A stretch of 64,000 bases of DNA from Bispira polyomma (lineage: Eukaryota). Shown here in pieces: positions 9,868 through 33,077 of the stretch; the first letter of the stretch is position 1, and the number at the start of each line of letters is the position of its first letter. The notes beneath the pieces are model-generated. The model ran no database searches. It saw only the letters and a list, made by a program, of their open reading frames with translations, and had not been told where the DNA came from. The stretch spans positions 29,388,001 to 29,452,000 of the forward strand of contig OZ287756.1 in the NCBI GenBank assembly GCA_965649765.1. The letters run 5' to 3'. Position numbers and translations under genes: made by a program.

Positions 9868-10422
9868 GTTGGCAAATACTAAGGTCTTGAGAAATACTCT
9901 AAAAGTGATCAGCTTCCTCCAGAGTCACAAGAGTGAAAGAAAACACTGTTGCCTCAGTACTAAGAAGCAAAGAGAAGTGGCCAAAAAGTAAGATGGAAAG
10001 GGGACAAGCTGTCAATCAACAATGATCTCATTTAAGTACAGAAGGACACCATAAAAGATCTTTTTGCATCAGCAAAGTTCCTCTACGCACTGCCCAAGAG
10101 TATCCTTGGCAGTACCTTCCAAGGTCACTCCATAGAAGTATCATGTCAAAATGATATAGTACCAACACTCACACACTTTATGCAGAAACCCGAGTTGCAA
10201 GAGCCACGCATAATGTTTATGCATACAGAATATTGGATTGGGACAAAGTGATTGAGCACTACGAGAATGATGGAGAGTGGAAAGTTACTCAAGGTTTTTC
10301 AGGATTCAGGCTTAAGCAATAAACTGGTTGTTGTATCTAGATGGCATGCTGGGAAAAACCTGGGTCCCTCGCATTTCAAGTACTTTGAAGAAGCAGCCAT
10401 GCAAGTCTATGGAGCCTCTTAG
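9868..10422 (+). pseudogene. Decayed LINE ORF1 C-terminus: L1-type CTD followed by an IMPACT/YigZ (UPF0029) domain
   Basis: Manual translation across stops and frameshifts: LANTKVLRN..SDQLPPESQE*KKTLLPQY*EAKRSGQKVRWKGDKLSINN, then GSTFQGHSIEV...RVARATHNVYAYRIL..VIEHYENDGEW/KLLKVFQDSGLSNKLVVVSRWHAGKNLGPSHFKYFEEAA...stop at 10420-10422. Confidence 0.82.
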
Positions 10423-10769
10423 GCTGACAGGTGACTGTTAAAAAGTTTTTGCTTAGGAATATGTTGGTAACTGTTGTAGACTTAGTGTTAATTATTATAG
10501 TAAGAGCTGCTTTTTTTGAAAAGTTTTTGGTAAATGCTGTATGTAATATATATTTTTTTCCGCTGGGAATAATCCTTATGTCACTTAGATTATTTGATTC
10601 AAAGCTTTTTTTTTCATTAGATTTTGGGGGATTTTGTGATCTTTATATCTTTATTTCTCTAGCAGAATACATAGAAGGTGTCTCAGTAAAGTAAAATAAC
10701 TGACCTATTATAATAATAGGTAACAGTAAAGTTAGCAATAACTGTACTATTATATTTTCTTTACACAAA

Positions 10770-11015
10770 GTCAAATTTGACCACAGCAAAAGATTACCAG
10801 CCTATAATTTTCTATAGGTTGGTTTCACATCCTAAACATCTACGACCAATAATAAGCGAGATATAGGCACTTTTAAGTTTGTCCATCTGCATTTGACCTT
10901 GAATGAGGGGCCAAAGGTCAAATCAGACCACATCAAAAGATTCCCAGGCCATGATTTCCTACAGGTTGGTTTCACATCCAAAACCTATTTGACCCAAAAT
11001 AAGCGAGATATAGAC
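10770..11015. repeat. Two diverged units (about 149 bp) of a satellite or Helentron-core-like repeat
   Basis: TCAAAT..GACCACA.CAAAAGATT.CCAG...GGTTGGTTTCACATCC...AATAAGCGAGATATAG occurs twice, with a TGACCTTG...AAGGTCA motif. Confidence 0.65.
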
Positions 11016-31800: not shown

Positions 31801-32676
31801 GGCAATTTTGAAGATTTATTGGTGAAAGATTTAGTATCAAAAGCAGGTCCCTTTATAACACTAGCGGAATTTAATGCCAAATATAAAGTTGCTCTTGACA
31901 GACTGAGCTATAACAAGGTCATTACATCTATACCTCAAACTTGGAAAAATAAAATTAAAGGAAAACAAATATCTACAAACTTGGCTATAATCAAGGCCAT
32001 AGCAATCACTGTGAGGGGAAGATTATCAGAATTTTCAAAAGTCAATAATAAAGCACTTTATTGGATTGCCACAGGTACAAAGATACAAGAACCAAAAGCA
32101 GTGGAAAAATGGATAGAGTCATATCCTTTTCTAGAAAGTGCTCCATGGCACAATATTTTTAAAGCGATTCATGTAATATCTAATGAGCCTTATCTTCACT
32201 CTTTTCAGTATAAAATTGTAAACAGGATTCTCAATTGTAATAACAATTTACATAAGTGGAAAATCAAAGAATCTGCAGCTTGTTTATACTGTGATCAAAT
32301 AGACACTTTGGAACATCATTTATTTTTCTGTAGGCATAGTAAAAATTTCTGGGATAAGTTTCAAGCATGGCTCTATAATATTTTAGTAATGAATAATGAA
32401 GCTGATTTAACAATATGTGAAGTTTTATTTGGTTTCGAGATGGATAAAAATAAAAATATTTCTTTTAATTATTGTAAAAATCTTTTAATTTTACTGAGTA
32501 AATGGTACATAAATATAAGAAGGACTGAAAATAAACCTTTAGTTTTTGATGAATATCTAGGGATTATAAAATCCAAAATCATAACCTATTTAAGTGCAAT
32601 CAATGAGATAAAAGCAGATGAAAGAGTTGATACAGGCATCAAAAATATATTTAATTTGATTTTGAGACATTTGTAG
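28855..32676 (+). CDS. L1/Tx1 ORF2p: APE endonuclease, reverse transcriptase and C-terminal CCHC
   Basis: 1273 aa uninterrupted: FNCRGL, LQETH, NVYAP, GGDFN, SRLDYF, SDH; KTPGSDG, WRPVSILNTDYK, DFEKAFD, RQGCPLS, QLADD; CLYCDQIDTLEHHLFFC. Confidence 0.97.
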   Translation: MNIPKDSICINSFNCRGLRENKKRNTAFNWLKSKHFGVTMLQETHSLEADEIKWAKQWDGEIYFSHGTNQSKGVAILIPKNLIEKIKIARIERDQLGRVIIIHCEIQSNHLTLVNVYAPTKDKSGLQLEFLHNLKEMLEEKSDTNIIIGGDFNTYLNFNLDKRGGQTETESEYSKQLSMFAEELSLTDIWRIRNPTELKFTRRENSRSGLVQSRLDYFLTSSQINYQISDCSIKPGFKSDHSLVKLKLQLIHTQPRGKSYWKFNNSLLRDSTYASLVKQELQDISGNEYLKNKNTLWDFAKCQIRTVTLSYCKSLSRKNREKENNLFKNIEILEREILEDKEKLQEYYKVKGEWEEIQTEKAEGVMLRSKAQWVEKGEKNTKYFLNLERRNYNTKYIKKLLTSNSTELTKPDDILAEEKSYYHNLYSTRVNDEQGLYKEFLDSTPRLNDIDKQICDAPLKLEEISKALKQLKNDKTPGSDGFTTNFYKFFWPDIKLLLFDSFKYSFEHKLLSNDQRRGILNLIPKANKDLRYLRNWRPVSILNTDYKILTKSLANRMQLVLPRLVQNDQVGYIKDRYIGENVRIIEDIMSSTNLRHIPGYIVLIDFEKAFDSVEWSFLFKTLKTFNFGPSFLQWIEIFYKKIQSCVTNNGYLSEYFELSRSIRQGCPLSALLFILVAEVMAIKIRKNENIKGITVEKKEYKICQLADDTTLFLSNIDSLVQLISVLVKFQNCSGLKINLEKSEVIPIGTCKFKDIKLPKAISKIHINKNAFKTLGIWFSYNLNESTHLNYENKLKTMESIINIWHSRNLSLKGKILIMKSLILPQVNYVLSVTYSPLNILQKIDKLLLNFLWGNKPPKIKRSVIIGNYSEGGLKMADIFTIHTISKIKWIKKLITENKERNWQPLFLYLFNIKMNRLKKKLPHDLRNKCLTSFHKQLFDCWETFHGVTPGTVEEIYNEFIFDNKFICSGKKPLEVKDFKLPKGNFEDLLVKDLVSKAGPFITLAEFNAKYKVALDRLSYNKVITSIPQTWKNKIKGKQISTNLAIIKAIAITVRGRLSEFSKVNNKALYWIATGTKIQEPKAVEKWIESYPFLESAPWHNIFKAIHVISNEPYLHSFQYKIVNRILNCNNNLHKWKIKESAACLYCDQIDTLEHHLFFCRHSKNFWDKFQAWLYNILVMNNEADLTICEVLFGFEMDKNKNISFNYCKNLLILLSKWYINIRRTENKPLVFDEYLGIIKSKIITYLSAINEIKADERVDTGIKNIFNLILRHL

Positions 32677-33077
32677 ACAGATTCTTGGTTCCAGAAATAG
32701 TAGATATATGATAATAGTAGATAGGTTTTACCACCCACTGTTAATGTGTTGTGTATTTGTTGTGTATTTGTGACTGTACTGTTGTGTCTTGTGTAACCTT
32801 TGTTTTGTGTATTGTTATGTATCACATTATTCTGCTGTTCCTGTCGTAAATAACATTATAGAAAATAAAAATATTTAAAAACAAAAAAAAAAAAAAAAAA
32901 AAAAAAAAAACTTTATGAGTAACTTTAGTTGTTTCAAAAGTGCATTCGTAGATGATTCCTTGTTAGAATATTTTGTATAAAAAATAGGTAATTTTTATAA
33001 TAGTGTTGTATTGCTTATTGCAATTCGTTTGTTCCCCCTTTTTGCATGATTATGCCAATGTTTATTGGCATAATTAT

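What the first reader, a model, noticed from the sequence alone, without database searches (positions are those of the whole stretch)
9868..32910. Shared architecture suggests a modular cargo slot at the ORF1 C-terminus of L1/Tx1 elements
Two distinct L1/Tx1 lineages within about 20 kb have the same layout: an ancient, prokaryote-shared domain at the end of ORF1, a roughly kilobase AT-rich spacer, then APE-RT. Inference: these elements swap effector domains at a fixed position, as phages do with anti-defence genes. This could also explain apparent expansions of NADAR-like and IMPACT-like genes in invertebrate annotations.
Basis: inference. Interest (0 to 1): 0.8.

Follow-up and report, generated by a model that had tools for sequence, protein, structure and literature searches.

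The report
LINE ORF1 proteins carrying add-on domains
Two dead copies of jumping genes (L1-type LINEs) sit in this window; in intact relatives the RNA-coating ORF1 protein ends in an extra domain, either a NADAR enzyme or the IMPACT "ancient" domain, and the data show two old, stable fusions that get re-paired with different reverse-transcriptase genes, not a slot where cargo is swapped often.

Summary
The layout is real. Element B (window about 27266-32908) is a 5'-truncated L1-type insertion with target-site duplication and poly-A. It has a NADAR ORF, a 1,096-bp AT-rich spacer and an intact 1,273-aa APE-RT ORF2. Element A (about 9892-14404) is a decayed copy with a UPF0029 (IMPACT-like) remnant, a 1.6-kb spacer and broken APE-RT.

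Full-length kin show ORF1p as coiled coil + L1-type RRM/CTD + C-terminal NADAR or UPF0029, ending 0-6 residues before the stop. Both designs are abundant here: more than 2,100 NADAR and more than 420 UPF0029 candidate sites.

The "swap slot" inference is only partly supported.
- The attachment point is fixed, but only two folded cargo types plus cargo-less kin were found.
- On the ORF1 scaffold tree each cargo forms a single group (100/100; one change among 179 proteins).
- On the ORF2 tree the cargo types interleave, and the AU test rejects monophyly (p = 8e-7). So whole ORF1 modules reassort among ORF2 lineages.
- Long spacers go with cargo: 0.4-1.6 kb against 31-109 bp in cargo-less kin.
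- The UPF0029 cargo is closest to animal IMPACT, which suggests host-mRNA capture.

NADAR catalytic residues are conserved; function is untested. The NADAR-Tx1 fusion was noted for oyster in 2025. This scan has flagged both fusions elsewhere in this genome.

The parts
9892..10416 (+). Element A: decayed 3' part of ORF1 (end of the CTD plus the UPF0029/IMPACT-like domain); 5'-truncated copy
   Evidence: tblastn to residues 280-465 of an intact family ORF1 (L014), 60% identity, E 1e-64. Pfam UPF0029 on 10252-10422, E 1.3e-7. At least 17 genomic copies at about 85% identity.
10417..12017 (+). Element A: ORF1-ORF2 spacer, AT-rich, with nested repeats. These are satellite-like units at about 10765-11016 and a SINE-like insert at about 11404-11662. 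The segment at about 11016-11731 is inverted relative to other copies.
   Evidence: Piecewise matches and strand flips in the own-genome DNA search. Sequence read. Kin spacers are 1,415-1,610 bp.
11902..12427 (+). Element A: perfect 262-bp tandem duplication spanning the spacer end and the ORF2 start
   Evidence: TRF: period 262, 2.0 copies, 100% match. The first 49 ORF2 residues hit twice.
12018..14404 (+). Element A: decayed APE-RT ORF2 with frameshifts, stops and an internal deletion near 13495 (ORF2 residues about 398-632 missing)
   Evidence: tblastn with kin ORF2 (L015-type), 60-80% identity in pieces. No ORF longer than 91 aa there.
27250..27265 (+). Element B: 5' copy of the target-site duplication (AACTTTATGAGTAACT); the last ~7 bases overlap element sequence (microhomology)
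   Evidence: Sequence. Other copies start matching at window 27259.
27315..27758 (+). Element B: remnant of ORF1 that is the NADAR domain only (147 aa). The copy is 5'-truncated inside ORF1. The catalytic Glu equivalent to E43 reads Gln in this copy.
   Evidence: Pfam NADAR E 2.2e-36. 145 of 147 residues identical to residues 198-344 of the longer ORF1 of copy L017, with E to Q at the SMEKFL motif.
27759..28854 (+). Element B: 1,096-bp AT-rich ORF1-ORF2 spacer with two internal A-runs (28145-28167, 28293-28320) and a local duplication
   Evidence: Sequence. Composition and homopolymer runs measured on the near-identical copy L017. No Rfam hit and no clear excess of RNA structure.
28855..32676 (+). 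Element B: intact ORF2, 1,273 aa (APE endonuclease, reverse transcriptase, zf-RVT)
   Evidence: Pfam. E 4e-101 to human LINE-1 ORF2p over residues 8-890. 99.7% identical to copies L017 and L018.
32677..32908 (+). Element B: 3' UTR and poly-A tail (poly-A 32883-32908)
   Evidence: Sequence.
32909..32924 (+). Element B: 3' copy of the target-site duplication
   Evidence: Sequence.

Best explanation
The window holds two dead copies of two different L1-superfamily LINE families. In intact relatives, ORF1 encodes a canonical L1-type ORF1p (disordered N-terminus, long coiled coil, RRM, CTD) extended at its C-terminus by one extra folded domain. That domain is either a YbiA-type NADAR hydrolase or the UPF0029 'ancient' domain of IMPACT. 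ORF1 is followed by an unusually long (0.4-1.6 kb) AT-rich non-coding spacer and then APE-RT ORF2.

Each fusion appears to have arisen once on its own ORF1 lineage and has been kept under purifying selection through extensive diversification. It has not been swapped repeatedly. The unit that does move is the whole ORF1 module: NADAR-type ORF1s now sit on several ORF2 backbones that otherwise carry UPF0029-type ORF1s, and on one non-L1 ORF2 clade.

Inferred, not shown:
- The cargo and the spacer were co-captured from the 3' part of a host mRNA (C-terminal domain, stop codon, 3' UTR) by template switching during reverse transcription.
- The long spacer then acts as a safe recombination zone for ORF1/ORF2 reassortment.
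- NADAR on ORF1p removes base-linked ADP-ribose from LINE RNA, cDNA or target DNA.
- The IMPACT domain tethers ORF1p to the translation machinery.
For: Architecture:
- Pfam places NADAR at residues about 267-412 of 416, and UPF0029 at about 387-491 of 495, in ten intact ORF1s.
- Both classes share an alignable scaffold with the cargo starting at the same point.
- The scaffold profile hits human L1 ORF1p (2YKP, E 8e-11). The AF2 scaffold model (pLDDT 96) matches 2YKO at E 3e-8, TM 0.76.
- The full-length model shows coiled coil 50-131, RRM, CTD and NADAR, and matches both 8BAU and 2YKO/2YKQ.

Abundance and unity:
- More than 2,147 NADAR and 427 UPF0029 first-look candidates; all 150 scored in each search were over the Pfam cut-off.
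- 70 of the 150 NADAR hits and 38 of the 150 UPF0029 hits lie in open frames of at least 380 aa.
- Contiguous multi-copy ORF1-spacer-ORF2 units at 93-100% identity.

One origin each:
- The scaffold-only tree splits by cargo at 100/100.
- Among 179 scaffolds there is one NADAR/UPF0029 change, and cargo-less proteins form a third group.

Reassortment:
- The ORF2 tree needs 4-5 cargo changes, all on branches with 100/100 support.
- The AU test rejects cargo monophyly (p = 8.1e-7, delta lnL 666).
- UPF0029 ORF1 groups mirror the ORF2 groups, whereas NADAR ORF1s do not.
- L005-type ORF2 is non-L1 yet is verified as one unit with NADAR ORF1.

Selection:
- The cargo is the best-conserved part of ORF1 (45% against 36% for the scaffold and 20% for the N-terminus, NADAR class).
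- Catalytic residues are kept: E43 31/31, K50 29/31, E125 30/31, D130 28/31, W89 30/31 (residue roles from PMC11543638).
- UPF0029 signature motifs are kept in at least 85% of 42 domains.
- Between families, synonymous sites are saturated while dN is 0.4-0.5.

Capture:
- The UPF0029 cargo is closest to IMPACT (6BQI, E 1.6e-17) and to animal RWD+UPF0029 IMPACT proteins at 40-50% identity.
- Spacers are 764-1,610 bp in 12 cargo-bearing families here, and about 400-675, at least 448 and at least 717 bp in three from other samples.
- Cargo-less kin have 31, 37 and 109 bp, and one with a disordered tail has 46 bp.
Against: - Sampling is small: 20 fetched loci from one genome.
- The representative search lists only the best 150 of 26,521 scaffold hits, so rarer cargo types may exist.
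- One UPF0029 protein falls inside the cargo-less group, so a second gain or a recombinant is possible.
- Many 'cargo-less' proteins scattered inside the cargo clades may be decayed or truncated gene models.
- The large scaffold tree has only 144 columns and many weak forks.
- The direction of the reassortment (ORF1 replaced or ORF2 replaced) cannot be told.
- The capture model has only correlative support. A-runs that could mark an old poly-A junction occur in family B and L006 only; most spacers have T-runs.
- No source host gene was identified.
- No host nucleic-acid ADP-ribosyltransferase was found (PF03496 and DarT searches were empty, but the controls were silent too).
- No RNA data exist.
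- Family B lacks the K50-equivalent lysine, and the window copy has the inactivating-type E to Q change.
Confidence: 0.78

Rival explanations
1. The ORF1 C-terminus is a hot slot at which these LINEs frequently exchange diverse effector domains, like accessory or anti-defence islands of phages.
For: - Two unrelated domains occupy exactly the same position behind the CTD.
- Cargo-less relatives exist.
- One UPF0029 protein sits in the cargo-less clade.
- Cargo types interleave on the ORF2 tree.
- T4-like phages do carry orphan NADAR-type antitoxin-like enzymes as a counter-defence (PMC11825919, listed).
Against: - Only two folded cargo types appear among the 150 nearest scaffold representatives. 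The other tails have no Pfam hit and look disordered.
- The scaffold tree separates the two cargo classes cleanly (100/100; one change among 179 proteins). So the interleaving on ORF2 is explained by exchange of the whole ORF1.
- Each class is old and internally diverse, at 30-50% identity.
Confidence: 0.1
2. Cargo has been swapped several times along ORF2 lineages, and the clean scaffold split is an artefact. The proposed causes are co-adaptation or gene conversion of the RRM/CTD to its cargo, or the exchanged unit being RRM-CTD-cargo while the N-terminal coiled coil stays with ORF2.
For: - The ORF2 tree is strongly discordant with cargo.
- The N-terminal coiled-coil region is too variable (20-23% identity) to be placed on a tree, so its history is unknown.
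Against: - The split has long, fully supported branches (0.86 and 0.78 changes per column, 100/100).
- It holds with 179 sequences from many samples (SH-aLRT 97).
- Class-specific differences are spread over the whole RRM/CTD. This fits shared descent better than convergence.
Confidence: 0.08
3. The NADAR and UPF0029 ORFs are host genes or pseudogenes that merely lie next to LINE insertions. The shared layout in the window would then be coincidence.
For: In the window itself both ORF1 remnants are fragments without the LINE-type N-terminal part.
Against: - In-frame fusion to an L1-type ORF1p scaffold in all ten intact ORF1s scanned.
- Element B is bounded by a target-site duplication that encloses the NADAR ORF.
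- Contiguous multi-copy units.
- 14 of 16 sampled sites have APE-RT downstream.
Confidence: 0.01

Closest known systems
Mammalian-type L1 ORF1p (type II ORF1: coiled coil, RRM, CTD; PDB 2YKO/2YKP, 2LDY, 2W7A)
   Same: The scaffold is homologous in sequence and fold: profile E 8e-11, Foldseek E 3e-8, TM 0.76. It has a long N-terminal coiled coil. ORF2 of element B is L1-like, E 4e-101.
   Different: A whole extra folded domain (NADAR or UPF0029) follows the CTD. The ORF1-ORF2 gap is 0.4-1.6 kb and not tens of bases. Pfam Transposase_22 does not reach threshold on these scaffolds.
[quoted passage not shown]
   Same: NADAR of the YbiA type in the ORF1 protein of an L1/Tx1-type LINE of an invertebrate.
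   Different: That paper gives one sentence, with no architecture, copy number, phylogeny or spacer. I could not compare sequences because Repbase is not available here. The UPF0029 counterpart was not found in any paper searched.
Modular, reticulate ORF1 evolution in the Jockey superfamily (CR1/L2: PHD, esterase, RRM and CCHC modules; Metcalfe and Casane 2014, PMC4120745)
   Same: ORF2 evolves tree-like while ORF1 types are exchanged between lineages, with extra domains added to ORF1 (here).
   Different: Here the superfamily is L1, with one jump to a non-L1 ORF2. The added modules are NADAR and the IMPACT domain. Each added module is monophyletic on its scaffold.
Free-standing NADAR hydrolases (DarT1-NADAR antitoxins, phage orphan NADARs, Phytophthora NADAR 8BAU, E. 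coli YbiA)
   Same: The fold and the catalytic residues E43, K50, E125, D130 and W89 are conserved. Like the phage orphans, the domain is carried by a mobile element without a partner toxin.
   Different: It is fused to an RNA-binding chaperone and is not free-standing. No activity has been tested. No cognate ADP-ribosyltransferase was found in this genome (inconclusive).
IMPACT / Yih1 (RWD plus 'ancient' UPF0029 domain; 6BQI) and bacterial YigZ
   Same: The UPF0029 domain is 40-50% identical to animal IMPACT and keeps the family's invariant motifs. In both proteins the domain is C-terminal.
   Different: There is no RWD domain, so GCN1 competition as in IMPACT is not expected. The domain's own function is still called elusive (PMC4503747).

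Membership tests
L1-superfamily (L1/Tx1) non-LTR retrotransposon | ORF2 with an N-terminal APE endonuclease, an RT and a C-terminal zinc-binding region, most similar to L1 ORF2p | tested here: met
   Pfam Exo_endo_phos, RVT_1 and zf-RVT on window ORF2. E 4e-101 to human L1 ORF2p over residues 8-890.
L1-superfamily (L1/Tx1) non-LTR retrotransposon | Type II ORF1p: coiled coil + RRM + CTD | tested here: met
   Profile against PDB: 2YKP E 8e-11. Structure models match 2YKO/2YKQ. Helix 50-131 in the full-length model.
L1-superfamily (L1/Tx1) non-LTR retrotransposon | Insertion by target-primed reverse transcription: poly-A tail, target-site duplication, frequent 5' truncation | tested here: met
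   Element B has a 16-bp TSD, a poly-A tail and 5' truncation inside ORF1. Element A is truncated at ORF1 residue 280.
Tx1 clade specifically | RT groups with reference Tx1 elements; many Tx1 elements are target-site specific | not tested
No reference Tx1 sequences were available and 3' flanks of copies were not compared.
NADAR (PF08719, YbiA family) | Profile match above the curated cut-off, and the YbiA-like fold | tested here: met
   126-149 bits against a cut-off of 35.1. 8BAU at E 9e-20 by sequence and TM 0.76 by fold.
NADAR (PF08719, YbiA family) | Catalytic and ADP-ribose-binding residues (E43, K50, E125, D130, W89 in Phytophthora numbering) | tested here: met
   Kept in 28-31 of 31 ORF1 NADAR domains. 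Exceptions: family B has Leu at K50, and the window copy has Gln at E43.
NADAR (PF08719, YbiA family) | Hydrolysis of base-linked ADP-ribose (or another N-glycosidase activity) | not testable with these tools
   This needs biochemistry.
UPF0029 / IMPACT 'ancient' domain (PF01205) | Profile match above the cut-off, and the invariant loop motifs | tested here: met
   59-92 bits against a cut-off of 27 in intact kin, and 32.1 bits in the window remnant. The motifs F.GH, H..YAY, DD.E, V.R and G..R are kept in at least 85% of 42 domains. 6BQI at E 1.6e-17.
IMPACT/Yih1 orthologue (GCN2 regulator) | N-terminal RWD domain that binds GCN1 | tested here: not met
   No RWD in any ORF1. True IMPACT hits carry PF05773 + PF01205. 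So this is the domain, not the protein.
   Two folded cargo types only among the 150 nearest representatives. Each is a single group on the scaffold tree.
Reticulate ORF1 evolution (as in CR1/L2, PMC4120745) | ORF1 type discordant with the ORF2 phylogeny | tested here: met
   The ORF2 tree needs 4 changes at 100/100 support; AU p = 8.1e-7. The scaffold tree needs 1 change at 100/100.

The most novel reading that the evidence does not exclude
LINEs of this group have twice captured the 3' part of a host mRNA (C-terminal domain, stop codon and 3' UTR) onto the end of ORF1p. This created RNA-coating proteins armed with a NADAR eraser of nucleic-acid ADP-ribosylation or with a ribosome-directed IMPACT domain, acting as host-manipulation or counter-defence modules. 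The captured 3' UTR survives as the kilobase spacer. It serves as a neutral recombination zone that lets the armed ORF1 hop between LINE lineages, and even between LINE clades. If so, most 'animal NADAR' sequences in such genomes would be transposon-encoded.
Probability: 0.22. Interest if true: 0.75.

Novelty: new variant of a known kind. Interest (0 to 1): 0.55.

Why it matters
- LINE ORF1 proteins are usually seen as plain RNA chaperones. Here two very successful groups of families, with hundreds to thousands of copies in one genome, keep an extra conserved domain on ORF1p.
- The NADAR case offers a direct, testable link between retrotransposition and base ADP-ribosylation of nucleic acids. 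The NADAR field states that the role of animal NADARs is unknown (PMC11125620).
- The IMPACT case gives a new handle on a universal domain whose function is still called elusive (PMC4503747).
- The ORF1/ORF2 discordance extends reticulate ORF1 evolution from the CR1/L2 groups to L1-type elements. The link between long spacers and cargo suggests how the fusions arose.
- Practically, thousands of NADAR and UPF0029 hits in such genomes are transposon genes and should not be counted as host gene-family expansions.

Tried and rejected
1. I first read the shared match start at window 27259 as the true 5' end, making ORF1 NADAR only. This was wrong: it is the truncation point of the window copy, and kin have longer ORF1s.
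2. Poly-A fossil idea. I asked whether internal A-runs in the spacer mark a template-switch junction. Only family B and L006 have A-runs; most spacers have T-runs or none. I kept it as weak speculation only.
3. Breakpoint mapping. DNA similarity between discordant pairs (L007 against L014/L015; L001 against L013/L016) starts exactly at ORF2. The spacers cannot be aligned, so no junction could be placed.
4. Structured RNA in the spacer of element B, a lead from note s1-688879. There was no Rfam hit at E up to 0.1. Window z-scores ran from -2.6 to +2.1 with no consistent excess.
5. A third cargo type. Tails of P0126/P0186, P0167, P0023, P0068 and P0036 have no credible Pfam hit and no match to my NADAR or UPF0029 profiles. 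The two Atlas searches (P0126 and P0167) gave nothing, and the P0126/P0186 and P0167 tails look low-complexity.
6. A host adversary. Searches of the own genome for PF03496 and DarT (PF14487) were empty, but the control genomes were silent too, so this is inconclusive.
7. Taxon and names. Cluster look-ups and protein searches gave almost only unnamed ENA, JGI or Logan entries. Sequencing runs are coded and none is RNA.
8. More loci for a larger RT tree. I did not try another route.
9. dN/dS. L017 against L019 gave 0.79, which fits L019 being a dead, decaying copy. Between families dS is saturated. Constraint is therefore argued from domain and catalytic-site conservation.
10. Classifying the L005-type ORF2. 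PDB hits show only the RT core, matching R2 and L1 equally, and relatives are unnamed. I left it as 'non-L1, unclassified'.

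
Full report
**What is in the window**

Element B is a complete target-primed insertion. A 16-bp target-site duplication (AACTTTATGAGTAACT) lies at 27250-27265 and 32909-32924, and a poly-A tail runs 32883-32908. Inside it are three parts:
- A 147-aa ORF (27315-27758) that is a NADAR domain and nothing else (Pfam E 2.2e-36, profile positions 13-162 of 163).
- A 1,096-bp AT-rich spacer.
- An intact 1,273-aa ORF2 with APE, RT and zf-RVT. It matches human L1 ORF2p at E 4e-101.

Element A is decayed.
- The stretch 9892-10416 aligns to residues 280-465 of an intact family ORF1, which is the end of the CTD plus UPF0029.
- A spacer of about 1.6 kb follows, with nested repeats.
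- Broken APE-RT pieces run 12018-14404, with an internal deletion and a perfect 262-bp tandem duplication.

Both copies are 5'-truncated within ORF1. I first misread the shared match start at 27259 as the family's 5' end. It is only where the window copy begins. Copies 99-100% identical to B carry a longer ORF1 of at least 344 aa.

**The full design, from relatives in the same genome**

Pfam searches of the whole genome gave more than 2,147 first-look candidates for NADAR and 427 for UPF0029. All 150 scored hits in each search were above the curated cut-off, and many lie in open frames of 400-540 aa.

I fetched 20 loci.

Ten intact ORF1s have the cargo at the extreme C-terminus: NADAR at about 267-412 of 416, UPF0029 at about 387-491 of 495. 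Upstream of the cargo both classes share an alignable scaffold with the motif RxNNLxFxNIxE ... RAHRxG ... RPIIxKF ... DKLxxxGKxY.

That scaffold is a true L1 ORF1p RRM+CTD.
- A 76-sequence profile hits human and mouse L1 ORF1p structures at E 8e-11 to 8e-10.
- An AlphaFold model (pLDDT 96) matches the human ORF1p trimer chain at E 3e-8, TM 0.76.
- A full-length model shows a disordered N-terminus, an 80-residue helix, RRM, CTD, a short linker and NADAR. It matches both 8BAU and 2YKO/2YKQ.

ORF1 is followed in every family by 764-1,610 bp of spacer at 26-30% GC, and then ORF2.

The ORF1-spacer-ORF2 unit is contiguous and multi-copy at 93-100% identity for the families of the window's B copy, L005, L007 and L013. 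It is also seen in the pairs L001/L002 and L014/L015.

Of the 16 NADAR and UPF0029 sites sampled, 14 have APE-RT downstream and one more has an APE fragment.

**Is the C-terminus a slot where cargo is swapped?**

Three tests bear on this.

1. A tree of the scaffold alone (177 columns, cargo columns removed) splits the NADAR bearers from the UPF0029 bearers with 100/100 support.

2. A scaffold profile searched against 1.84 billion representative proteins found 26,521 hits. Among the best 150 listed:
   - 45 carry UPF0029 and 19 carry NADAR.
   - 69 stop within 40 residues of the CTD.
   - 16 have other tails without any Pfam domain. The two longest such tails look low-complexity.
   - On a tree of 179 scaffolds the NADAR/UPF0029 label changes once. 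NADAR, UPF0029 and cargo-less proteins form three main groups, and one UPF0029 protein lies among the cargo-less.

3. On the ORF2 tree the two cargo types are interleaved.
   - With 19 rows there are 5 changes.
   - With 13 non-redundant rows there are 4 changes, on branches with 100/100 support. The AU test rejects a tree with the NADAR bearers held together (delta lnL 666, p = 8.1e-7).

The UPF0029 families group the same way by ORF1 and by ORF2: (L013, L016), (L009, L010) and (L011, L014/L015). NADAR ORF1s behave differently. They sit on ORF2 backbones inside those UPF0029 groups (L001 with L013/L016; L007 beside L014/L015). They also sit on a NADAR-only backbone (B, L004, L006), and on a very divergent ORF2 (L005) that matches only the RT core of R2 and L1 alike.

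The simplest reading is two old fusions, each made once, followed by exchange of whole ORF1 modules among ORF2 lineages. This is the reticulate ORF1 evolution described for CR1 and L2 (PMC4120745), now seen in L1-type elements. It is not a phage-like hot spot with many alternating cargoes.

**Where the cargo came from, and the spacer**

The UPF0029 cargo is closest to eukaryotic IMPACT (6BQI, E 1.6e-17). After the LINE ORF1 proteins themselves, the next-best hits in 5.8 billion proteins are animal IMPACT proteins (RWD + UPF0029) at 40-50% identity over the domain. In IMPACT, and in single-domain NADAR proteins, the domain lies at the protein's C-terminus.

Relatives without cargo have short gaps to the next ORF: 31, 37 and 109 bp. 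One with a disordered tail has 46 bp, and there the next ORFs carry APE and RT. Cargo-bearing elements have 764-1,610 bp here. In three elements from other samples the gap is about 400-675, at least 448 and at least 717 bp.

I infer that the domain, its stop codon and a 3' UTR were captured together from a host mRNA by template switching. I also infer that the long non-coding spacer later eased ORF1/ORF2 recombination. This rests on correlation in a small sample. The spacers of discordant pairs cannot be aligned, so no junction could be mapped. A-runs that could mark an old poly-A occur in only two families.

**Function**

The cargo is the best-conserved part of ORF1. In the NADAR class it is 45% identical between families, against 36% for the scaffold and 20% for the N-terminus.

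The residues that bind and hydrolyse ADP-ribose in the Phytophthora NADAR (PMC11543638) are kept in 31 ORF1 NADAR domains: E43 31/31, K50 29/31, E125 30/31, D130 28/31 and W89 30/31.
- Family B has Leu at the K50 position.
- The window copy has Gln at the E43 position, the kind of change that inactivates the E. coli enzyme.

UPF0029 signature motifs are kept in at least 85% of 42 domains. Between families, synonymous sites are saturated while dN is 0.4-0.5.

My working mechanism is as follows. ORF1p coats the LINE RNA and travels to the integration site, so a fused NADAR could strip base-linked ADP-ribose from the RNA, the cDNA or the target. Orphan NADAR-like enzymes do this for T4-like phages against DarTG1 (PMC11825919). 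This step is inferred. No host transferase was found, although those searches had silent controls, and no RNA data are available.

For the IMPACT domain the literature itself calls the function elusive and links IMPACT/Yih1 to ribosomes (PMC4503747). Tethering ORF1p to the translation machinery is my best guess, held with low confidence.

**What is known**

One 2025 paper notes in a sentence that Repbase Tx1 LINEs of the Pacific oyster have YbiA-type NADAR in ORF1 (PMC12477816). NADAR papers list molluscs and cnidarians among the animals that have NADARs and say their role is unclear, without mentioning transposons. I found no paper linking UPF0029, IMPACT or YigZ to retrotransposons.

Earlier notes of this scan report both fusions at many other places in this genome, so the fusions are not new to the scan. 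What this report adds:
- The common L1-type scaffold and the fixed junction.
- One origin per cargo.
- ORF1/ORF2 reassortment, supported by a formal test.
- The link between spacer length and cargo.

**Verdict**

This is a new variant of a known kind: LINE ORF1 modularity. Interest is moderate. The Tx1 label was not tested, and the organism is unknown to me.

Noticed in passing
window 11902-12427: A perfect (100%) 262-bp tandem duplication spans the end of the spacer and the first 49 codons of ORF2 of element A. It is either very recent or an assembly artefact.
   Followed up: partly
window about 11016-11731 (with a SINE-like insert at about 11404-11662): This spacer segment of element A lies in the opposite orientation to the same segment in more than 10 other copies of the family. 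The 259-bp insert inside it is a highly repeated element at about 90% identity genome-wide, and ARAGORN finds no tRNA in it.
   Followed up: partly
window about 10765-11016: Satellite-like units of about 147-250 bp that occur elsewhere in the genome as tandem arrays at 80-92% identity.
   Followed up: no
window 9700-9890: Sequence just upstream of the truncation point of element A is shared (87%) with only one other copy, at C9:47665784-47666555. This suggests a segmental duplication of an already truncated insertion with its flank.
   Followed up: no
window 41299-42370 (minus strand): Weak APE/RT fragments related to the divergent L005-type (non-L1) LINE ORF2.
   Followed up: no
window 27259-27265: About 7 bases of microhomology between the target site and the element at the 5' truncation junction of element B. 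This is typical of L1 5'-end joining.
   Followed up: no
L005:2779-6216 (own genome, C6): A NADAR-type, L1-like ORF1 is paired, as a verified multi-copy unit, with an ORF2 that is not L1-like. The ORF2 matches only the RT core, to R2 and L1 equally. Some of its relatives carry PHD or RNase H domains.
   Followed up: partly
L021:7001-12130 (ENA ERZ25069870): A LINE from another sample has an L1-type ORF1 that ends in a 176-residue acidic, Ser/Asn-rich tail with no folded cargo. It lies only 46 bp upstream of APE-RT.
   Followed up: partly
window 22967-23416: An ORF with weak sulfotransferase-like Pfam hits (E 0.002-0.007), possibly an exon of a host gene between the two LINEs.
   Followed up: no
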